This document shows positions 29,259-39,300 of a stretch of 64,000 nt of DNA, one piece after another. Source of the stretch: Hyaloraphidium curvatum SAG 235-1 (taxonomy: Eukaryota; Fungi; Monoblepharomycota); assembly GCA_025558095.1 (NCBI GenBank), contig JAIVFI010000036.1, forward strand, positions 248,001 to 312,000. The letters run 5' to 3'. The position numbers and the translations under genes are program-made. The notes below the pieces were generated by a model. The model did not search any database. It had not been told where the DNA came from and saw only the letters and a program-made list of their open reading frames with translations. Position 1 is the first letter of the stretch. Each line of letters opens with the position of its first letter.

Positions 29259-30258
29259 CTAGTATCCCCTTCCCAACGGGATGTTGTTTGCGCCAGTCAT
29301 TCCCATCCCAGGCATCATACCCGGCATGCCCATTCCCGGCATCATTCCAGGCATGCCCATTCCAGGCATCATTCCCGGGACACCCATGCCCATCATAGCG
29401 TACTGTGCAAGGCGAAAAGTGTCAGCTGAACATCCCAGTAGGTCTTTGCTACGATTGCTCACCAAACGATTCGGGTTGTTTTTCCGAGCCTGGCTCGCGA
29501 TGAGACGCTCTGCCGCGCCACCGTGACGCTCCCCTTTGCCGTCCTTTTTGAGCGCGTACTGCACGTTGATCGGCTTCCCCATAAGATGTTGGCCGTTCAT
29601 GGCCTCGATGGCTGCATCGGAAGATTCAAAGTTGTCGAAGCTGACGAAACCAAATCCTTTCGAGTTGCCTGTGTCATTGTCGCGGGACACCTTTGGCGGT
29701 TGCACGATGAGTCCGAACTGGGAAAAGGTGTCGTACAGGACGCGTTCGTCCACGTTCGGATCCAGGTTCCCAATGAAAAGGTTGGCCCCGACGTCGATCT
29801 GCCGCTTATCCGACGAGGCCTTGTTGACACGGAGAGGTTTGCCAAAGAACTTGACCATCTGAAGGGGCGTGTCAGCCGAGCCGGCGAGGAGGTTGAAAGG
29901 AGACCCACGTTCATGATCTTGATGGCGTAGTCGGCATCCTCCTCCGACGCGTACTCCACGAAACCGTAGCCCTGGTGCATCTGCGTTACTCTGTCCTTTG
30001 GAAGGTGGACATTGACTGAGGGCGTGGGCACCATTAGGGAGGTCCCGTGAGCTGCGCACATCGCGGCGGCTACCCGAAGGTCAACGCACCGACGGGTCCC
30101 GCCTGAAGAAACAGCTCCCAAACCAGAGCATCTGTCGCGCGCTCGTCGAGGTTGCCACTGGTGAGCTGCCCGTCAGCGACCGTGAATATTTGTCCCCGCG
30201 TTCCTACCACCCACACGTAGCACGTCGCCTCCTGGTTACGCTCCTGCGGTTGCGCCAT
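29259..30258 (-). CDS. SF3B4: Splicing factor 3B subunit 4 (SAP49/Hsh49)
   Basis: [65 protein letters not shown]; two RRMs and several introns. Confidence 0.96.
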
Positions 30259-30595
30259 CGCGACAAAGGACACGGCCGGAAGTGCGGGCTGCCGCCACCA
30301 AAGCCCCAAATGGCCGATTGAAGCCGAGAGTCCGGAGCTCAAGAATCCGCGGCCGCGCAAGTGTCGGTTCCCAGACGGCCGATCACGCCTTCAAAGATCC
30401 TCCGTCGCGCAGTTGCAAAGTAAGAAAGCACGTTCCAAGCCGCGAAAGGCCTGGAAACGGAGGGGTCACGGCCGTGAGGTGTTGGATGAAGGTGCCGTTC
30501 GCCCCCTGCTCCCACGGCCCACGGCACACGCAAACAACGCCCCGGCTTCGTCGAAGAGCGATGTTCACCAAGGCTACAGATTCCTAAATGATTGA

Positions 30596-31657
30596 ATGAT
30601 AAGAAGCCTTTCGAGGCGCGAATTGCTGGCATTCTGCCTCCTTGCCATCGCCTTGCTGGTCATCCTCCTCCGAACTCCTCGTTTGGCTCGCCCGCTGCGC
30701 TCATCGCTCCATCGGATTCGCCCTTCCTGCAGCCTGTATGCTGGCAAACTTCACCTCAATCACACGCACCCCACGGCCTCTGGCATTCTCCCCGATCCCG
30801 TCTCGGGCTGCCCCCCCCTCCTCGCGCTGTTCCCCGATCTCTCGAAGCCACCGGCTTGGTTCCCCAACAAACGCGTGGTACTCATCGGGGATTCGGTTGC
30901 AAGGAACGCGCTCGTGGATTTCTGCTCCTTTGTCGGCGGAAACTGCTCCGCAACCGAGCTTCGCACCCGCGATTCTGCAGCACGCTGCTCGAGCGCCAAC
31001 GGCGTCGACCGGCTCCCCGGCCGGCCCTACTCATGCCGCCTCCCACAATGGAACCACCAGTGGGACTCTTTTGTTGTTTACGGCCTTACGCCGGAAGACC
31101 GTCTGTGGGTCGACAAACCCGGCGTGGAACAGCCCGCGGGCTTGAGAGGAAGGCTCAAGGTCCTGCGTGAGAGGGAGCGTGGGCTCGCCGCACCGGACAT
31201 GGTGATCATTTCGTCCTTTTTCTGGGACCTTGCGCGGTACCAGCGCCACCAAGTGCTCCACACGGGGAATGACTCGCGCCCAGAACTGTCACCATCTTTC
31301 CTTTCGGCCTGGAGGGCGAATGCTACTGCATTTCTCCTTTCTGTTCGCGAAATCTATCCTCAAGCTACTCGCATCCTCTGGGCGGTCCCGCACGACGTTG
31401 ATCCAGGGGCGTTCCGCACCTTCTCTCTTCCTCTTGGGGCGGCCAAAGACACCATCTCGGCCTTCCATCCCATCCGGACCGCTGCCCTCATCGCTGAGCA
31501 GGAATCATTTGCTCAAGGGCGGGAGTTCCCGTTCGGAAGGCTGGTGAAAGGCCAAGAAAGGTGGCTGACGGATGGGGTTCATCCCGGCGCGGCCGGGAAT
31601 GCGGTGTGGGGTGGGTTAGTCCTGGAAGAGCTGAGGCGCACGGTGGAGGAGCTATAA
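30596..31657 (+). CDS. Type II membrane SGNH/GDSL-like esterase or acyltransferase
   Basis: N-terminal anchor LLAFCLLAIALLVILL, GDS motif (VVLIGDSVARN), FWDL, and DxxH motif (TDGVHP). Confidence 0.75.
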   Translation: MIRSLSRRELLAFCLLAIALLVILLRTPRLARPLRSSLHRIRPSCSLYAGKLHLNHTHPTASGILPDPVSGCPPLLALFPDLSKPPAWFPNKRVVLIGDSVARNALVDFCSFVGGNCSATELRTRDSAARCSSANGVDRLPGRPYSCRLPQWNHQWDSFVVYGLTPEDRLWVDKPGVEQPAGLRGRLKVLRERERGLAAPDMVIISSFFWDLARYQRHQVLHTGNDSRPELSPSFLSAWRANATAFLLSVREIYPQATRILWAVPHDVDPGAFRTFSLPLGAAKDTISAFHPIRTAALIAEQESFAQGREFPFGRLVKGQERWLTDGVHPGAAGNAVWGGLVLEELRRTVEEL

Positions 31658-31772
31658 CGTTGAGGAGGGAAATCGCGTAAGTAGTGCGAGGCAAGGCCTC
31701 ATGCGACGACCGTCGCAGCGAACGTCAGTGGGGTGTTCAGTCAGATCTCTATCATGGCCAATACAAAGCAGC

Positions 31773-34700
31773 TCAGAACGACTCCTTGTAAAAGCGGAAA
31801 GTCGTCGCAGAGCCCTGCTTGCGGTAGTAACCCGTGGCGATCCGGCAGGCCCGCTCGACGTCGCGGGCAAACCCGATCGGGCCGCAGAAGAACACGCCAA
31901 AGTCCGCCCCCGGCGATCCCATCGCCTTCTCCTTCACGATCGCCGGCCAGGACGGCCTGCCCGGGTACAGGTTCCAGCGCCGCCCCACCGCCTCGCGCTT
32001 GTGCGCGTCCCTGTCCGCCGTCAGGAAGACGTTGAGCTCAATCGCCGTCCCGTCGCCGAGGGCCTGCTCCGTCGACTCCATGAGGTCCCTGAAGGCGTCG
32101 AGCTCCTTGCTGTCCCGGCAGACCCAGTAGAACGACACGTTCATGGGGTGCTCGTTGTACCGCCTGCTGATGGAGCGCAGGACCGAGGCAAAAGGGGTGA
32201 CGCCGATGCCCGCGCCGACAAGGATGACGTGCGTAAACTTCCACACGTCCTCTGCCGGCGCCCCGTACGGCCCGTCGATGCGGAGCCGGGGCAGGATGGT
32301 CCGGTACGTCTGCCCCGTGACGGCCGACGGGTCCGCGGCAAAGACGTGCAGCAGGTGGTCCTTGACCTTGGACGCCCAGTCGAACCCCTTGCGCACGCGG
32401 ATGTGCACCGTCATCTCGTCGTCCTCGGGCGCCGACGAGATGGTGAATGGGTGGAACTCAAGCCTGCTGCCCGACACCCAGGGGTCCGCGAGGAAGATGT
32501 ACTGGCCGGGTTTGAAGGCCACCTTGCGCCCGCCCGGGTGCCGCATGCTCAGGCGCAGAACATCGGCCGACACCATGTCCGCCGCGCTGACTTCGACCTC
32601 GACCTCGCGCCGGCGGTACTGGAGCGCCTTCTCCGCAGCCATGAACAGCAGTGGTATCAGCACAAAGGTCCCTGGCGGATGGAGCAAGGTCAGGCGCTGC
32701 AATCGACCGGCGCGGAAAAGAACCCACAGAAGCTCGGCCCGTGGATGAGCAGCACCCCGTACACCGGAATCCAGAGCGTGTGCATGATGAGAAACACCGA
32801 ATAATCGATCCGCAGGCAGCACAGCTTGGTGATGCGCCTGCCAAACAGCGTCCCCACGAGGAGCACGAGCATCAGCAGCGTCACGAGGTGACCCGTGAAC
32901 CCGGCGACGGTCAGCACCGCGGGCTGGACCAGCGGCACGCCGTTCTCCTTCTGCTCCCAGAGCATGTTGAGATAGTGCATCAATATGTGCCCGACTGAGC
33001 CGATGACGATGAGGACGGCGACAAAGATGTGCAGCGAGACCGCGTCCCAGAGCGGGATCACCTCGGCGATCGGGGTGCCGCGGAGGTAGCCGAGCAGGCT
33101 CTTCATGACAGGGAAGAGCAGGAAGGCAAAGTTGAAGTCCAGCGTCTTGCCGAAACCCTTGGCCAAAGGCAGGTAGACCGAGCTGAAGGGTATGAGTGCG
33201 GAGACTGACCAGATGCCGAAGCCGAAGGCCCCAGCGTTGGCGAGCAGGTAGATCAGGGCGATGGTCATCCGGGGCCCGTGCCAGTTCCACCACACGGCCA
33301 CCCGGTCCGCGCATGTTACCCTCCTGTCCTCGCCGAGGTCCCCCCCGCCCTCCTCCGGGTCCGCGGCCGGCGCCGCCTCATCGGGAACCGCGCCGGGAAC
33401 CATCGGAATCGGCACGGGCTTGAGCGGTGGCACGTAGGTCGTATCCATGCCGCCGGCCGGGATTACGGGGTTGTGGCTCCCGCGGTACACGGGCGCCGCC
33501 GTCCCCTGCACACCGCGCACGCTGGATAGCTCCACGGCGCCGGTGGAGGCTTCCAAACCCGCGGATCCGTTGGCGTATCCGTTGGCGTAGGTTTCTTTGG
33601 CCTGAGCCTGCACCGTCCCGTTGGCGGCCGGCTTGTACGCGGCCGCGACGGGCACCGCGGCTGCCTTGGCCGGCATCTTCCACGGCTTGACGTCCGCAAA
33701 CGCCTCGATCTCCAGTTCCTCCTTGCCCTTGCGCGTCATGCATGACGCCACCTTCCCCCCCGGGTTGCGCTTGGCCCACACCGACAGTCCCCACCACGCC
33801 AGCAGCGCCAGCACGATGCACCCCACGGCCGCGATCGCCACCGCGATCCCGATGGTCTGCCAGTCCGTCGCGACGGTCAGCGTGCCCTTCATGTCGCGGT
33901 TGGAGAAGGCGTGGTTGCGCGTGCCGACGAAGTGGTACGTGCCCGTGCGGGTGACCATGAAGGGCGGGAAGTTCTGGTACGCCGAGGCCGCGTTGAGGAA
34001 GTTGCACGACGCGCGGTCGTCCTCCCTGACCGCCGAGAGGTTGCACGGCCCCTGGTTCGCGTAGGCGAAGCGGGCCGCGAGCTCCGCGGTTGGCGCAAAG
34101 TGCGCGGCGGCGCCGCCGGCCACGTTGGCGGGCACCGACAGCCCCCTTGCCGCGATCACGGCGAGGTTGGACCTGTCCGTGCCCGGCAGCCCGTTGCCTT
34201 CGTTGCCCTGGGGGTTGGCGTCCGACCCCGTCCACTGCACGTGCAGCCAGTCCCCCGCGACCAGGTCTAGCCGCGAGGGGACGAAATCGTACTCGACCGA
34301 GGGGTAAACCTGCACGATGTTGCCCCTCCGCCCGCGCACGTTGAGGTTCACGAACCGCGGGCGGCGGAGGGCGCCGCTCCGTGCCACACCCTCGGGCGGG
34401 GCGCGGATCCTGAAGGCGTGCGTGCGGTCCTCGAACACGCGGAAGGTCTGCGAGGTGTCGACGTTGAGCGTGAGCGGGCCCGAGACGCCCTCGCCGTAGC
34501 CGACAAAGTCCCTGCGCGGGTCCGTGGAGAGCGCGCCGTTCTGCGCGGCAAAGGTCGAGTCCCCGGGAAAGTCGGCCGTGGAGACGTTGTACCGGATCCG
34601 GAGCACGCACAGCGCGCCGTCCGCGTGGCCCGAGGGCACGGTCCACGTGTAGGACGGCATGTCACTCGTGCCGTCGGCGGTGCCGAGGTGGTTCGAGCGG

Positions 34701-35688
34701 CCCGAGGGGCAGGCAGTGCACGCCGGCGGCGACTGCGCCCACGCCGAACCGAGGGTCCACTGGCCCCCGCCCGCCGTGCACGCGGTCTCGTTGTTGTACC
34801 GCGGGAGGCTGCATGAACCTTTGGGCTGGATGTTCTGGCTGCCCTGCTGGAGGGCGGGGCAGGCCTGCGAGGCGTCCGAGGCGCAGATCCAGACGTCGCG
34901 CCAGGGGCTAGGGTGCCAGTACGGGAAATAATCCCTGGACACAGCGGGCAATCAGCAACGCAGGCAGCAGCCATCACGATAGGGAACCCACCGCTCCTCG
35001 GCGCACTCGAACCCGTACCGCGTCCCTGCCGGGTTCTGCCGCGTGTACCTCGCCGTGTCGCCCCCCAGCCTCTGGTCCGCCGTGAACAAGCCCCTGTTCC
35101 TCTCCCTCGTCCGGCACGCGTCCCAGAACTCGAACGCCTCGTGCTGCCCGTACCGCAGCTGCGACGGCTCCGCCAGCGCGGCCTCGGGCACCGTCGACGT
35201 GTTCGTGCCGTCCCGCAGGCCGGGCATGCTGTCCTCGCACGCGTACTGCAGCACGATCTTGCTCTCCACATTGGGGTTCCCGGGGCCGGAGCCGTGCTGC
35301 GCGGTCCATTCGATCCGGAGCTCCGAGCCGGCGTAGAACTCCATCGTGCCCTTGCCGGCGCCGGGCAGCGTGGGGTCGTACGAGCCCGTGGCGTTGAGGC
35401 ACGGGCCGGGGCACGCGTCGCCGACCTGGTAGCCGCCGCGGGCGTTGTTCTGGCTGTCGAAGAGGCGGTTCTCGTTGGTCGCCTGCGAATCGGGCGTCGG
35501 GTCAGATGTGGCCCATTCGGGGGGCCCGAGGGACGGACCTGGTTCGACACCTCGTTCAGCTTGTTGTTACTCCCCCGCGGCGAGTGCAGATAGATGTCCC
35601 CCAGGGCGGGAGCGGCGAGCAGGGGCAGGAGGAAGATTGGGATCCAGGCTGCCGCGGCGGAGCCCCTCCTCGCCGCCATGGCCGGCAT
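31773..35688 (-). CDS. DD3-3-like ectodomain + TM + NADPH oxidase (NOX) fusion protein, ~1,248 aa
   Basis: Exons 35688-35539, 35482-34992, 34934-32728, 32671-31773 (3,747 nt, frame-consistent). Signal peptide, then DIYLHSPRGSNNKLNE, NRLFDSQNNARGGY, ECAEERDYFPYWHPSPWRD, GRRGNIVQVYPSVEYDF, TRNHAFSNR (DD3-3-like). Then a TM helix and NOX motifs: four heme His, FKPGQY, HPFTISS, IDGPYG, GAGIGVTPF, GRP, FFCGP, YKESF*. Confidence 0.88.
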
Positions 35689-36349
35689 CGCGAACCCCGG
35701 ATCCCGGGCCACAGATGAGGGCGCGCCGAGTGCCCGGAAGCGGGGCCTCGGTACTGGCCGCACGGCGTCTGGTCGGGGGGGGGGGCGTTTGCTGGGTTGG
35801 GGACACGGACTCCGCCCGCACACGGAGCTGAGCCCCCAAGCCCCGACACGCACGGCTTCCGTCTCGTCGCATCGAGGCAAATGGAACGCAGAATGAACGA
35901 CGGTGGAGCCGGGATGCGTACGATGGCGTGGATCGACGGATTTATCGACTTACGGCCGGAACGAAGGCGTCCAGTGGCACCGATCGGTCCCCCACTACCC
36001 CACCGAGCGAATCGCGTGGGGGACGAACACCAGCTGTAGATCGCTGTCTCCAGAAATGAAGAGATGATCCCTGATCTGATTTCCGGGTGCGATCTGGGGG
36101 GTGGAGGAGCGCTGAGGCGGTACGGGGCGTTCTCGGGTCTGTGCCGGGCAGCAGACGCCGGCGACGGAAGATCCGCATCTTTCCAATCTCAATGCGGTGG
36201 TAGGAAGGGGAGATCGGAGTTCCCTCGGGGGTACGGGGCGTTGTGTGGTACAGCGTCGGCGCGAGTCCGGCCGGCTCCCACGAGTTTCCACGACGAACAG
36301 CCGCCAACATCGCGACATCCGGGGGCGCAGTGGGCGCCGGACACGCGCG

Positions 36350-39300
36350 ATGCCGTCGCTAGCGGCTCTGTTCCAGGCCGGCGGCGAGCGGTTCCGGCTG
36401 GGCGGGGCGGCGGCGGCGCAGGCGGACGTGCCGGCCGCGGAGGGGGAGCCCGAGCCGCCGCCGCGGGGGCCGCGCGACGCGGACGCCGACGGGGGCGGCG
36501 CGGCTGCGGACGCTGAGACGGCGCCGGCCGAGGGCGCCGACGCGGCCGCGCGGCCCGCGGGGGAGGGCGGCGCGGCAGACGCGGACAGCGCCTCCCCGCC
36601 GCCCGCGGGCGCCGGCAAGAAGAAGAAGAAGAAGCCGAAGCGCGCGGACGCCGAGGCCGCCGCGCCCGCAGACGCCGCGGACGTGATCGCCGCCGTCAGC
36701 GACTTTGTCGGCGCGGCCTCGCGCGCGCAGCAGGCGGCCGACGCCCCGGCAGACGCGCGCGGCGGCTCGCCCGGCTCGCAGGGCTTCGTGACGCCCGACT
36801 CGGACGCGCCGCCGAAGGAGGGCGGCTTCCGCGACGCGCTGCCGGACGCAGGCAGCGACAGCGACGACGAGGACGCACAACTGCCCGGAGCGCCGGGATC
36901 CGCCGCCGCCGCAGCGAAGCGGAAGAAGAAGAAGAAGAAGAAGCCCGCCACCGGAGCTGCCGCCGGCACGCAGGCACCCGAGACTTCTTCCTCCGCGCCG
37001 GCATCTTCCTCCTCCGCACCGTCGGGCCCCTCCGCCGCATCCTCCGCACCTCCCTCCTCCTCCTCTTCCGCACCTGCATCCTCCTCCTCCGCCTCCAAAT
37101 CCGGCAAACCCCCCGCACCCGCTGCGACGGGCCCCCGTCCCGACCCGGCTCCCGCGGAAAAGCTCCGCTCCCGGCGCGAGCAGCTGCAGCAGCGCCGCAC
37201 CGCGCGGATCCCCATCATCCGCACGCAGCCCGCCAAATCCGCCAGCTTCTCCTCGCAGGCCTCGTCGTCGGCCGGGGGGAACGGGAGCGGCGCGGGGAAG
37301 GACGACGCGGCGCCGAACCTGTCGCGGGACCAGGCCGACGCCATCATGAGCTACACCTCCCAGGTGTTCTTCCACAACTACCTGCGGCAGGTGGTCGGCG
37401 TGGGTGGGGCGGCGGGGATCAGCGTGGTGCAGCAGCGCGGGAGGTGGGTTCCTGCGTCGCCTACCTGGGGACGATGCTGATCTGTCGGGCTATTCAGCGA
37501 CGACGAGCGCGAGGGCCACCCGTCGCGCAAGCGCCGCGAGGACGCGGACGTGGAGCGGCGGAGGGACATCGTGGACCAGATCAAGAAGCTCAAGGGGAGC
37601 GACTGGGAGCCCGTGCAGGCGGCGCCGCTGGCGAGGTGGGATTGGCCGGTCGAGGTCGCGGGATCGAGCGCTGACGATGGAAACGGTCCCTGTCCCACAG
37701 GATGAAATACAGCACGCTGCAGACCGCCGGCGAGGTCATGATCCAGGTCAACCTCCCCGGGGTCAAGGAGGACGAGGTCGTGGTCGGCTGGCACGGCGAC
37801 AAGCAGGTCGAGCTCTCCTTCCCCACGGTGCAGTTCCACCCCGACGAGCCCACCGCGCTCTCCCTGGCGCTGTACGGCGCCGTGGTGCCCAAGAACACCA
37901 AGATCGAGTGCAAGCCCAAGCACGTGCAGGTGACGCTGCGCAAGGCCAAGGTGGGGCAGTGGGAGCGGATCGAGGGGCAGAGGAGGGACCGCAAGGCCGA
38001 GAACGGGGGCGAGGCGCAAGCGGCCCCGGGAACGGAGGCGGCGGAGGAGGCCAGGGGGAGGGGAGGGGCGGCGGGGGCGGACATCGACGAGATCGTGCGG
38101 GAGATCGAGGGGCGTGCCGGGGGTGGGCAGGCGGCGCCGAGGCCGGACAAGAGGTCCGCGTCGGTGGGCAAGCCAGCCAAGGAGAAGGAGGGGCCGCCGG
38201 CGGTGCGGACGGCGTCGGGGACGGAGCTGCCGTCCGAGGCGGGGCAGGCGATGCCGGGGAGCTGGGTCGAGGCGCCGGCGTATTCGTGGCCGGAGCTCGA
38301 GGGCGCACCCGACGGCGTGGAGCAGGGCGGGGAGGAAGTTGGGGAGCTGGCGCCGGCGGCGAGGAGGAGCTACGCGCCGGCGGGGCTGTTCAACATGGGG
38401 CAGACGTGCTACATGAACAGCATCCTCCAGGCGCTGGTGTCGATACCCGACGTCGGTCGGTACTTCATCGGTGGGTCGTCTTCTTGCTGTTCAAGCACCG
38501 TTTGCTCATGGATTGCTCCACAGACAACGACTATACCAACGACATCAACGCCACCAACCCGCTAGGCCACAAGGGCGAGATGGCCAATGCCTTTGCTGCC
38601 GTCGTCAAGCAGCTCCTCACCCCCGGTGCCGCGAGCTTCACCCCCAAAGCCTTCCTCAGCACGCTGCGCCAGCTCTGGTACAACCTGCAGGACGAGTACC
38701 AGCAGCACGACGCGCACGAGCTCATGTCCTTCCTCCTGGACGCCGTGCACGAGGACCTGAACCGCGTGCAGGACCGCAAGAAGGTGCCGCAGCTCGAGGA
38801 GAAGGACGACGAGCCGGACCACCTCGCTGCGCGGCGCTTCTGGGAGCACCACTCGATGCTCAACGACAGCGAGATCGTGCGGCTGTTCCAGGGGCTGTAC
38901 CGGAGCGCGGTCGAGTGCAAGAACTGCAAGAAGCGCAGCGTCAAGTTCGACCCGTTCATGTACATGACCGTCTCGCTGCCCGAGGAGCGCATCCAGGTGC
39001 GCGTGAGCTCGGTTTCCATCACGGGGCAGAAGACCGTGCACCCGGCGCAGTCCTTCCCCAAGGAGGCCAAGTTCGACGACGTGCGCAAGCGCATCGGGCA
39101 GAATAACGCGGTCGTGTGCGCGCTGAGCGACGACGGGACCATGGTCAGGACGGCGTACAAGTCGGAGAACCGGATATCGAGCATTTACAACGAGCACGGT
39201 CCCCCGGGCCCGCTCGATGTCTTTGTGTATGTTCCGTCGGGTCTATTGTCGCGCGGTCGTTCCTGACACTCTCGTCTGCCCAGCTACGAGATCGAGCCCG

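What the first reader, a model, noticed from the sequence alone, without database searches (positions are those of the whole stretch)
31773..35688. DD3-3 ectodomain fused to a complete NADPH oxidase: a DUOX-like architecture with a different extracellular module
Seen in sequence: the junction needs no splicing. One uninterrupted exon (34934-32728) runs from the DD3-3-like region through a TM helix (IGIAVAIAAVGCIVLALLAWWGL, ~33853-33780) and a ~160-aa low-complexity cytosolic linker into the NOX membrane core. Both heme His pairs are present (SLH...VGH, 14 apart; IMH...LIH, 13 apart), as are the FAD (HPFTISS) and NADPH (GAGIGVTPF, CGP, C-terminal ESF) motifs. Established knowledge: the extra His four residues after the second heme His (GHILMH) and the Thr-Gly in TM4 (FTGH) are motifs used to distinguish superoxide-producing NOX from ferric reductases. 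DD3-3 is a Dictyostelium-named family of unknown biochemical function, and I know it only as stand-alone secreted or membrane proteins. DUOX has the same layout with a peroxidase-like ectodomain plus EF-hands; no EF-hand is visible here. Inference: the fusion suggests DD3-3 domains consume, sense or regulate extracellular ROS or electrons delivered by the NOX, which would give the family a function and define a new NOX class. I cannot confirm that it is undescribed.
Basis: partly seen in the sequence, partly recalled or inferred. Interest (0 to 1): 0.9.

Follow-up and report, generated by a model that had tools for sequence, protein, structure and literature searches.

The report
NADPH oxidase with DD3-3 ectodomain
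This chytrid-like fungus (Hyaloraphidium curvatum) makes one spliced mRNA for a 1,248-residue membrane protein that joins an extracellular DD3-3 domain to a complete NADPH oxidase; the same fusion forms its own oxidase branch in many eukaryote groups and I found no paper that describes it.

Summary
On the minus strand, 35688-31773, a four-exon gene encodes a signal peptide, a DD3-3 ectodomain, one membrane helix, a 162-residue low-complexity cytosolic linker and a full NOX core. Contigs of a public run remove all three introns (56, 57 and 56 nt, GT..AG) exactly as predicted, and they cover the whole gene as two contigs that overlap by 30 nt. The organism is Hyaloraphidium curvatum. Its deposited gene model has 709 aa and starts at an internal Met, so it lacks the ectodomain.

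All NOX signature residues are present here and in 19 of 20 full-length homologous fusions (one has Ser at the Thr-178 site). The fusion occurs in chytrids, aphelids, a green alga, a pelagophyte, dinoflagellates, a haptophyte, an amoebozoan and a diplonemid transcriptome. Fused NOX cores form one clade (SH-aLRT 98) inside the true NOX group. Fused ectodomains form one DD3-3 subfamily (99).

A confident model of a homologous ectodomain shows a beta-sandwich that weakly resembles LPMOs, followed by a cupredoxin-fold domain without blue-copper ligands. What the ectodomain does is still inference. No paper I found describes the architecture, though databases hold it under uninformative names. It is a new variant of a known kind.

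The parts
31773..35688 (-). Whole coding region of the DD3-3-NOX gene: 4 exons, 1,248 codons plus the stop at 31773-31775
   Evidence: reading frames and splice sites; contigs of run X1 with all introns removed; deposited partial model P0121, 100% identical
35539..35688 (-). Exon 1 (aa 1-50). Signal peptide at 35688-35599. Invariant mature N-terminal Asp31 at 35598-35596
   Evidence: The Asp follows a small residue at -1 in nearly all family members. Cleavage is inferred, not predicted by a tool
35483..35538 (-). Intron 1, 56 nt, GT..AG
   Evidence: spliced out in an X1 contig (joint 35481/35538, cut +1)
34992..35482 (-). Exon 2 (aa 51-213 plus 2 nt of codon 214): first part of the DD3-3 N-domain, holding an invariant His (aa 113)
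34935..34991 (-). Intron 2, 57 nt, GT..AG
   Evidence: spliced out in an X1 contig
32728..34934 (-). Exon 3 (aa 214-950, partial codons at both ends): rest of the ectodomain, TM0, linker and NOX TM1-TM5 in one open frame
34367..35598 (-). DD3-3 N-domain (spans introns 1 and 2): beta-sandwich with long loops, 10 conserved Cys, invariant His at aa 113, 221 and 296. Weak fold likeness to LPMOs
   Evidence: Alignment A1; model of homolog P0003:21-566; VIA-align Z about 5 to AA10/AA13/AA15/X325 proteins. Boundaries transferred by alignment
33866..34366 (-). DD3-3 C-domain: cupredoxin fold without the Cys/His/Met blue-copper ligands; one invariant His (aa 445)
   Evidence: Z 7.3 to 5fc9, 7.1 to plastocyanin; Foldseek, cupredoxins and NirK; conserved residues
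33785..33853 (-). TM0 (aa 575-597), the single helix that returns the chain to the cytosol
   Evidence: hydrophobic stretch; every fusion has one at this place
33299..33784 (-). Cytosolic low-complexity linker, 162 aa, no Pfam domain and no EF-hand. It is much longer than in homologs: TM0 start to the NOX N-terminal helix is 185 residues here against 52-120
32610..33298 (-). NOX six-helix heme domain (includes intron 3). Heme His849 (33031-33029), His863 (32989-32987), His932 (32782-32780), His945 (32743-32741). NOX-specific His867 (32977-32975) and Thr894-Gly895 (32896-32891). Lys806 lies at the NOX2 Arg54 site
   Evidence: csNOX5 TM domain 2e-10, human NOX5, NOX2; signature columns; Ferric_reduct 19.5 bits, under the cut-off
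32672..32727 (-). Intron 3, 56 nt, GT..AG, between TM5 and TM6
   Evidence: spliced out in an X1 contig; same junction in P0121
32253..32597 (-). FAD-binding domain (Pfam FAD_binding_8); FAD motif at 32453-32433
   Evidence: 6.1e-18
31845..32237 (-). NADPH-binding domain (Pfam NAD_binding_6). Gly-rich motif at 32216-32190, Cys-Gly-Pro at 31886-31878, C-terminal Phe at 31778-31776
   Evidence: 9.5e-21; NOX2 5.9e-37, csNOX5 2.6e-34, DUOX1 6e-28

Best explanation
This is a single type-I membrane flavocytochrome, a distinct and ancient NOX class. Shown: one mRNA encodes a signal peptide, a DD3-3 ectodomain, TM0, a cytosolic linker, six heme-binding helices and FAD/NADPH domains. Inferred from NOX family knowledge: cytosolic NADPH reduces FAD, and electrons cross the membrane over two hemes held by the four His. 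At the outer heme they reduce O2 to superoxide or H2O2, because the residues that separate oxygen-reducing NOX from metal reductases are kept in nearly every fused homolog. Inferred from the fusion and the folds: the tethered DD3-3 ectodomain acts on what the NOX core delivers at the outer face. It has an N-terminal beta-sandwich with an invariant mature N-terminal Asp and invariant His residues, followed by a cupredoxin-fold domain. Most likely it is a redox or metal-dependent module that uses or converts the superoxide/H2O2, much as the DUOX ectodomain shapes the DUOX product. No EF-hand or other known regulatory domain is present, so control must come from elsewhere.
For: One gene, one mRNA: exon 3 is a continuous frame across the junction. 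The X1 contigs splice all three introns exactly and tile the gene with a 30-nt (k-1) overlap. Complete fused ORFs occur in independent transcriptomes: MMETSP Nephroselmis and a pelagophyte, Biecheleria, Ceratiomyxa.

NOX identity: the dehydrogenase half matches NOX2 at 5.9e-37, csNOX5 at 2.6e-34 and DUOX1 at 6e-28. The TM half matches csNOX5 at 2e-10. The model of homolog P0003 hits NOX2, DUOX1 and NOX5 structures at E 1e-25 to 1e-33. The nearest non-fused relatives are NOX1-3/NoxA-type proteins, with no protein named as an FRE ferric reductase among the named hits. [quoted passage not shown] These criteria come from PMC3591440.

Distinct class: fused NOX cores form one clade (FastTree 99; IQ-TREE SH-aLRT 98). 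Fused ectodomains form one DD3-3 subfamily (99).

Ectodomain: about 60 columns are at least 90% conserved, including 4 His and 10 Cys. In this protein both Cys of two conserved Cys columns eight residues apart (P0003 residues 107 and 115) are Ser, a joint loss that fits a lost disulfide pair. The model has pLDDT 93.7 with a cupredoxin fold at Z 7.3 and LPMO-like hits at Z about 5.

This genome has no other DD3-3 copy.
Against: There is no biochemical data for any member. No single contig spans the ectodomain/NOX boundary. The two contigs meet just 3' of TM0 and differ in mean depth (232 against 614), so an extra NOX-only transcript from an internal start is not excluded. The cupredoxin-fold domain lacks the blue-copper ligands, and the LPMO likeness is weak (Z about 5) and lacks the N-terminal His. 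A metal centre is therefore unproven. I could not read model coordinates to see whether the invariant His residues cluster. The full-length model has pTM 0.60 only, and the docking test of ectodomain against TM domain gave no answer. No FRE sequences were in my trees.
Confidence: 0.6

Rival explanations
1. Electron-delivery enzyme. The heme chain does not reduce O2 as its main task. It passes electrons from the outer heme to a redox centre (for example copper) in the docked DD3-3 ectodomain, which then carries out an extracellular reduction or oxygenation. The analogy is to ferric reductases fused to DOMON domains, or to cytochrome b561 feeding copper monooxygenases.
For: Both ectodomain halves have folds typical of copper redox proteins. 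The family has invariant His residues and an invariant mature N-terminal residue. Extracellular redox domains fused to FRD cores are known (FRE-DOMON, PMC3591440). A b561-NOX fusion also turned up among the relatives (P0342).
Against: The residues that PMC3591440 uses to separate O2-reducing NOX from metal reductases are kept in the window and in 19 of 20 full-length fusions, with Ser for Thr in the twentieth, and the core sits inside the NOX group. The canonical copper ligands of cupredoxins and LPMOs are absent. Docking of the ectodomain on the TM domain was not supported (no answer, not evidence either way).
Confidence: 0.2
2. Receptor-type NOX. The DD3-3 ectodomain is a ligand-, glycan- or cell-contact-binding module with no chemistry of its own, and it switches or localises the ROS-producing core.
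For: An ascidian DD3-3 homolog (HrSMLP1) is a hemocyte surface glycoprotein. Binding of an antibody to it triggers the release of phenol oxidase (PMC6916515). The ectodomain carries N-glycosylation sequons and many disulfide Cys. The fusion has no cytosolic regulatory domain.
Against: Conservation is extreme: about 60 columns are at least 90% identical across eukaryote supergroups, including charged and His residues and the mature N-terminus. That fits a catalytic site better than a recognition surface. The linker that would carry the signal is unconserved in length and sequence.
Confidence: 0.12
3. Not one working protein. The two halves are made or used separately, through an internal transcription start, or through cleavage in the long linker after translation.
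For: The deposited annotation starts at an internal Met and has no ectodomain. The contigs break just after TM0 and differ in depth. Several other genomes carry split models (P0006+P0127; P0010+P0128).
Against: The frame stays open across the junction. The contigs overlap by k-1 letters. The deposited model begins inside the last strands of the ectodomain fold, which makes no structural sense. Complete fused ORFs exist in independent transcriptomes. Both domains have co-evolved as single clades. The split models lie next to each other on the same contigs.
Confidence: 0.05

Closest known systems
DUOX (dual oxidase)
   Same: Same layout: signal peptide, large ectodomain, one extra TM helix, a cytosolic segment, then the six-helix NOX core with FAD/NADPH domains. 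The core is homologous (DUOX1 6e-28; E 1e-27 to 1e-31).
   Different: The ectodomain is DD3-3 (beta-sandwich plus cupredoxin fold), not a peroxidase-like domain. The cytosolic segment has no EF-hands. In the tree the core is nearer the calcium-independent NOX1-3/NoxA-B group. DUOX itself was not in the tree.
NOX1-3 / fungal NoxA-NoxB (gp91phox type)
   Same: These are the closest solved structure and the closest named relatives of the core (NOX2 5.9e-37; NOX3/NOX2-like at about 1e-38). All signature residues are shared. The protein ends in a C-terminal Phe.
   Different: Those enzymes have no ectodomain, no signal peptide and no seventh helix. They depend on p22phox/NoxD and cytosolic activators, which I did not look for. 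The site of NOX2 Arg54 is Lys here, as in NOX5.
Stand-alone DD3-3 proteins (Dictyostelium DD3-3, ascidian HrSMLP1, invertebrate and protist DD3-3-like)
   Same: Homologous over the whole ectodomain, 36-47% identity, E down to 1e-105. They share the conserved His, Cys and N-terminal Asp and the fold (Atlas cluster 'Protein DD3-3-like', TM 0.74).
   Different: Most end after the ectodomain or a membrane anchor. In the tree they lie on the other side of a 99%-supported split from the fused forms. Their biochemical function is unknown (PMC6916515).
Ferric reductases fused to extracellular DOMON domains (Naegleria, oomycetes; PMC3591440)
   Same: An FRD-family transmembrane electron chain joined to an extracellular domain thought to take part in electron transfer.
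   Different: Those cores are of the FRE type and lack the NOX signature residues. The ectodomain is a heme- or sugar-binding DOMON domain, unrelated to DD3-3.
LPMOs and LPMO-like copper proteins (AA10, AA13, AA15, X325)
   Same: The N-domain of the model superposes weakly on them (Z 5.0-5.2, 129-165 residues). The aligned range starts at the mature N-terminal Asp in the model, and in five of the eight matched chains it starts at chain residue 1. Both families have an invariant first residue of the mature protein.
   Different: The first residue is Asp, not the His of the histidine brace. There is no sequence similarity. The Z scores lie in the range the tool warns may reflect only a common beta-sandwich.

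Membership tests
NADPH oxidase (NOX group of the ferric-reductase-domain superfamily) | Six-helix domain with two heme His pairs in TM3 and TM5, spaced 14 and 13 residues | tested here: met
   His849/His863 and His932/His945; conserved in all 20 full-length fusions; aligned to the csNOX5 and NOX5 TM domains
NADPH oxidase (NOX group of the ferric-reductase-domain superfamily) | FAD- and NADPH-binding dehydrogenase domain of the NOX/FRE type | tested here: met
   PF08022 6.1e-18 and PF08030 9.5e-21; NOX2 5.9e-37
NADPH oxidase (NOX group of the ferric-reductase-domain superfamily) | [quoted passage not shown] | tested here: met
   His867 and Thr894-Gly895; kept in 19 of 20 fusions, with Ser for Thr in the other; criteria read
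NADPH oxidase (NOX group of the ferric-reductase-domain superfamily) | Phylogenetic placement among NOX rather than FRE | tested here: inconclusive
   The core nests among SH3-NOX, NOX1-3/NoxA-B, RBOH and EF-hand NOX when rooted on a bacterial NOX-like protein. No NOX4, DUOX or FRE rows were in the trees. No protein named as an FRE ferric reductase appears among the named rows of the top 120 hits
NADPH oxidase (NOX group of the ferric-reductase-domain superfamily) | NADPH-dependent production of superoxide or H2O2 | not testable with these tools
   Needs an enzyme assay
DD3-3 family | Sequence homology across the ectodomain to proteins named DD3-3 | tested here: met
   649 hits. Proteins that UniRef/NCBI name DD3-3 (Symbiodinium, Effrenium, Candidula) score E 1e-63 to 1e-70. 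A local HMM of A1 finds the domain. Pfam has no model
DD3-3 family | Shared fold | tested here: met
   The model of homolog P0003 (49-57% identical to the window's exons) matches the Atlas cluster 'Protein DD3-3-like' at TM 0.74 over 466 residues. The window's own joined ectodomain was not folded
DUOX | Peroxidase-like ectodomain (PF03098) and cytosolic EF-hands | tested here: not met
   No Pfam hit in the ectodomain or linker. Only the layout is shared
Blue copper proteins (cupredoxins) | Cupredoxin fold | tested here: met
   Model residues 375-546: Z 7.3 (5fc9), 7.1 (plastocyanin), 94 aligned residues, rmsd 2.3-2.7; Foldseek probability 1.00
Blue copper proteins (cupredoxins) | Type-1 copper ligands (His, Cys, His, Met) | tested here: not met
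   The only conserved His in this domain is aa 445. There is no conserved Met, and the two conserved Cys lie in an inserted region. Ligand positions were judged from the alignment, not from coordinates
Lytic polysaccharide monooxygenases | N-terminal His of the mature protein (histidine brace) | tested here: not met
   The first mature residue is Asp in 73 of 76 filled rows. The fold likeness is only Z about 5

The most novel reading that the evidence does not exclude
DD3-3 is an unrecognised family of extracellular redox (probably metal-dependent) enzymes, built from an LPMO-like sandwich that uses an invariant N-terminal Asp plus a ligand-less cupredoxin domain. Its ancestral partner is a NOX. 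The fused form dates back to early eukaryotes and is a self-contained machine that makes ROS, or delivers electrons, and uses them on the spot. The stand-alone DD3-3 proteins of animals and amoebae would then work with a separate NOX/DUOX.
Probability: 0.25. Interest if true: 0.9.

Novelty: new variant of a known kind. Interest (0 to 1): 0.72.

Why it matters
Textbook NOX classification lists NOX1-5, DUOX, RBOH and fungal NoxA/B/C. The two broad surveys I read (PMC3591440, PMC9421330) contain no DD3-3-bearing form. Here a further class is defined by its ectodomain. It is monophyletic in both halves and is found in fungi, aphelids, amoebozoans, green algae, stramenopiles, dinoflagellates (including coral symbionts), haptophytes (Emiliania) and perhaps diplonemids.

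Three things follow. First, it gives the first mechanistic lead for DD3-3, a family of unknown biochemistry that is widespread in invertebrates and protists: it is physically wired to a transmembrane electron/ROS source. Second, it offers candidate genes for the extracellular superoxide production described for marine phytoplankton and coral symbionts (my background knowledge, not checked here). Third, in H. curvatum it appears to be the only NOX-type enzyme, which makes a clean knock-out or expression test possible. It also corrects a truncated public gene model.

Tried and rejected
- Pfam on the ectodomain exons gave nothing, even at E 10.
- A profile of 93 ectodomains found no solved structure by sequence.
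- Complex prediction of the P0003 ectodomain against its NOX TM domain gave no answer (score 0.00). This is evidence neither for nor against docking.
- The full-length model of P0003 has good domains (pLDDT 85.5) but pTM 0.60, so I draw nothing about how the ectodomain sits on the core.
- The protein-atlas search on the N-domain returned only DD3-3-like clusters.
- The search of earlier findings gave nothing on this gene.
- The 'unclassified chytrid NOX' of PMC9421330 looked like a possible earlier description. The sequences in its supplement (KXS19446, XP_016606104) start without a signal peptide or ectodomain and are different proteins.
- The neighbouring genes are unrelated: an exonuclease, an RRM protein, a UCH protease and asparagine synthase.
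I obtained the coordinates instead from a printed ruler of the exon translations.
I used the exons by reference, the deposited partial protein P0121 and the full-length homolog P0003.
Full report
**What is in the sequence**

The region is GC-rich, 62-70%. On the minus strand an ATG at 35688 opens a frame with a typical signal peptide. I followed three short introns by eye: 35538-35483, 34991-34935 and 32727-32672. They are 56, 57 and 56 nt long and all are GT..AG. The exons are 35688-35539, 35482-34992, 34934-32728 and 32671-31773, giving 1,248 codons.

Exon 3 is one open frame of 735 codons. It holds the last two thirds of the ectodomain, a 23-residue hydrophobic helix (33853-33785), a 162-residue Ala/Pro/Gly-rich linker, and helices 1-5 of the oxidase core. 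The junction between the two halves therefore does not depend on any splice.

**Transcript evidence**

One public run holds 94% of the sampled words of this stretch. Its contigs, laid on 31700-35750, skip exactly the three predicted introns, with CT..AC ends on the plus strand. They show no other differences, so the run is cDNA-like.

- One contig covers 35750-33719, and another covers 33748-31700 and runs on past the gene's 3' end.
- They overlap by 30 letters, which is what neighbouring contigs of a 31-mer graph do. A 37-nt side branch sits at that point.
- I read this as one continuous mRNA broken by a minor variant.
- No single contig crosses the point, and contig depths cannot rank parts of a gene. 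An additional NOX-only transcript is therefore not excluded.

**Organism and public annotation**

A search with the exon-4 part of a window ORF returned a 100% identical 709-aa protein from Hyaloraphidium curvatum (Monoblepharomycota), named 'ferric reductase NAD binding domain-containing protein'. Its sequence starts at an internal Met, 34 residues before TM0, inside the last strands of the ectodomain. It uses the same exon 3/4 junction. The deposited model is therefore N-terminally truncated by 539 residues.

**The oxidase half**

- Pfam finds FAD_binding_8 (6e-18) and NAD_binding_6 (9.5e-21). Ferric_reduct reaches only 19.5 bits, below its cut-off of 28.
- Against solved structures, the dehydrogenase half is closest to NOX2 (5.9e-37), Cylindrospermum NOX5 (2.6e-34) and DUOX1 (6e-28).
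- The membrane half is closest to the csNOX5 TM domain (2e-10) and human NOX5.
[quoted passage not shown] All are present here, together with the other three heme His, at spacings of 14 and 13. They are also present in 19 of 20 full-length fused homologs, and the twentieth has Ser for the Thr.
- The NOX2 Arg-54 site is Lys, as in human NOX5.
- No EF-hand or any other domain is found in the linker. The distance from the start of TM0 to the NOX N-terminal helix is 185 residues here against 52-120 in homologs.

**The ectodomain half**

Exon 3 residues 1-365 found 649 proteins.

- Most are stand-alone proteins of 560-620 aa. Some are named DD3-3 by their sources (Symbiodinium, Effrenium, Candidula; E 1e-63 to 1e-70).
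- The best hits, at 46-50% identity, are proteins of 1,050-1,290 aa that also carry the three FRD Pfam domains. They come from Gonapodya, Phlyctochytrium, Spizellomyces (SPPG_05133), Gorgonomyces, Rhizophlyctis, Boothiomyces, Globomyces and Amoeboaphelidium.
- An alignment of 93 ectodomains has about 60 columns at 90% identity or more. They include His at P0003 positions 105, 211, 285 and 436, and ten Cys, all present in the window.
- Two further conserved Cys columns, eight residues apart (P0003 residues 107 and 115), are both Ser here. This joint loss fits a lost disulfide pair.
- The first residue after the predicted signal-peptide cut is Asp in 73 of 76 filled rows. It is preceded by a small residue.

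**Fold**

The model has pLDDT 93.7 and pTM 0.92.

- The ESM Atlas cluster 'Protein DD3-3-like' has the same fold (TM 0.74).
- Model residues 375-546 form a cupredoxin domain. VIA-align gives Z 7.3 to a Nitrosopumilus cupredoxin and 7.1 to plastocyanin. Foldseek lists plastocyanins, pseudoazurins and two-domain nitrite reductases.
- The type-1 copper ligands are not conserved.
- Residues 3-365 form a beta-sandwich with long loops. Its best matches are eight LPMO or LPMO-like proteins (AA10, AA13, AA15, X325) at Z 5.0-5.2. The aligned range begins at the mature N-terminal Asp of the model, and in five of the eight chains it begins at chain residue 1.
- The tool warns that Z below 8 may reflect only a common arrangement, and the histidine brace is absent. 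I treat this as a lead, not a finding.

**Distribution and trees**

Named fused sequences come from these groups:

| Group | Examples |
|---|---|
| Fungi | Chytridiomycota, Monoblepharomycota |
| Aphelids | Amoeboaphelidium |
| Chlorophyta | Nephroselmis |
| Stramenopiles | a pelagophyte |
| Dinoflagellates | Biecheleria, Cladocopium, Durusdinium |
| Haptophyta | Emiliania huxleyi |
| Amoebozoa | Ceratiomyxa |
| Diplonemids | Artemidia transcriptome, where prey contamination is possible |

- Several of these are complete ORFs from transcriptomes, which is independent evidence for single mRNAs.
- In a tree of 92 ectodomains, a branch with 99% support separates 19 fusions plus 6 'alone' rows from 66 stand-alone rows plus one fusion, P0016. 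Of the six 'alone' rows, two are split models with the NOX half on the same contig and one is a partial protein.
- A HMMER search of 1.8 billion representatives with the NOX core found 5,314 relatives. A local HMM of the ectodomain marks 23 of the best 150 as fused.
- In a 219-row FastTree, all 46 fused cores lie in one clade of 63 (support 99). The other 17 rows all lack the ectodomain N-terminus. Most begin inside the core, in TM0 or in the last ectodomain strand, and the rest sit on short contigs or are split models.
- Rooted on a bacterial NOX-like protein, this clade is sister to a group that includes SH3-domain NOX proteins. Next comes the NOX1-3/NoxA-B group, with RBOH and EF-hand forms further out.
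- An IQ-TREE run on 100 rows gives the 35 long fusions as one clade with SH-aLRT 98. For that run I left out 14 of those 17 truncated or uncertain rows.
- No NOX4, DUOX or FRE rows were included, so placement 'inside NOX' rests on this limited tree, the hit ranking and the motifs.

**This genome**

A six-frame search of the 31.9-Mb assembly finds no second DD3-3 locus. It finds one other clear FRD gene, on contig 12, with a strong Ferric_reduct score, plus one faint hit on contig 2. A NoxA/B-type gene did not appear at this sensitivity.

**Literature**

- 'DD3-3' occurs in 12 papers, none of them about oxidases. The most informative describes an ascidian hemocyte surface glycoprotein.
- The FRD survey PMC3591440 lists DOMON, peroxidase, EF-hand and SH3 additions but no DD3-3.
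- The 'unclassified chytrid NOX' of PMC9421330 are different proteins without an ectodomain.
- Searches combining NOX with cupredoxin, LPMO or chytrid terms, and searches for accession numbers of fused proteins, found nothing.
- The library lacks most subscription-journal papers, so 'undescribed' is provisional.

**Mechanism**

- Shown: one gene, and a DUOX-like topology of signal peptide, ectodomain outside, TM0, cytosolic linker, and a canonical NOX core with the dehydrogenase domain inside.
- Inferred from family knowledge: electrons flow from NADPH to FAD, across two hemes, to O2 at the outer face.
- Inferred from the fusion, its age and the strict conservation of both halves: the ectodomain acts on what the core delivers.

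I rank the readings as follows:

1. Use or conversion of superoxide/H2O2 by a redox or metal module (0.6, counted together with the structural claims).
2. Direct electron transfer to an ectodomain cofactor (0.2).
3. A receptor-type regulatory role (0.12).
4. Two separate products (0.05).

The docking test gave no answer, and the full-length model leaves the domain arrangement open (pTM 0.60).

**Verdict**

The gene belongs to a coherent, pan-eukaryotic NOX class that is present in databases but that I did not find described in any paper. The chemistry of the ectodomain is open.

Noticed in passing
window 33752-33955 and upstream; protein P0121: The deposited H. curvatum protein for this gene (709 aa) starts at an internal Met inside the last strands of the ectodomain. 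It misses 539 N-terminal residues that the cDNA-like contigs show to be transcribed and spliced.
   Followed up: yes
L003 (G000 contig 12, 41655-45284), minus strand about 1435-2728: This is the only other clear ferric-reductase-domain gene in the genome: Ferric_reduct 78 bits, NAD_binding_6, weak FAD_binding_8. No NoxA/NoxB-type gene turned up, so the DD3-3 fusion may be this fungus's only NOX.
   Followed up: partly
proteins P0391, P0355, P0331, P0303, P0342: Among the nearest NOX-core relatives are other unusual fusions: N-terminal SH3-NOX, which lies in the sister group of the DD3-3 clade in my tree, PAS-NOX, and a weak cytochrome b561 hit in front of a NOX core.
   Followed up: partly
window 29644-31772 (approx.): The cDNA-like contig covering the 3' half of the gene runs about 2 kb further, across the convergent plus-strand ORF 30596-31657 (353 aa, no Pfam hit). 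The two convergent genes probably have overlapping or abutting 3' ends.
   Followed up: no
window 33299-33784: The cytosolic linker is about 162 aa of Ala/Pro/Gly-rich low-complexity sequence. The distance from the start of TM0 to the NOX N-terminal helix is 185 residues here against 52-120 in homologs. This looks like a lineage-specific expansion in a GC-rich genome.
   Followed up: partly
proteins P0006+P0127 (one 5,047-nt contig); P0010+P0128 (Fimicolochytrium jonesii, one contig): In other assemblies the same fusion seems to be split by gene callers into an 'ectodomain' protein and a 'ferric reductase' protein. Database counts of the architecture are therefore underestimates.
   Followed up: partly
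protein P0016: One fused protein has an ectodomain that falls among the stand-alone DD3-3 proteins, although its NOX core lies in the fused clade. This could be a domain swap, a second fusion or a tree artefact.
   Followed up: no
window 36197-37480: Both strands carry long low-complexity ORFs with poly-Ala, poly-Ser and poly-Lys runs just upstream of the gene. They have no Pfam hit.
   Followed up: no
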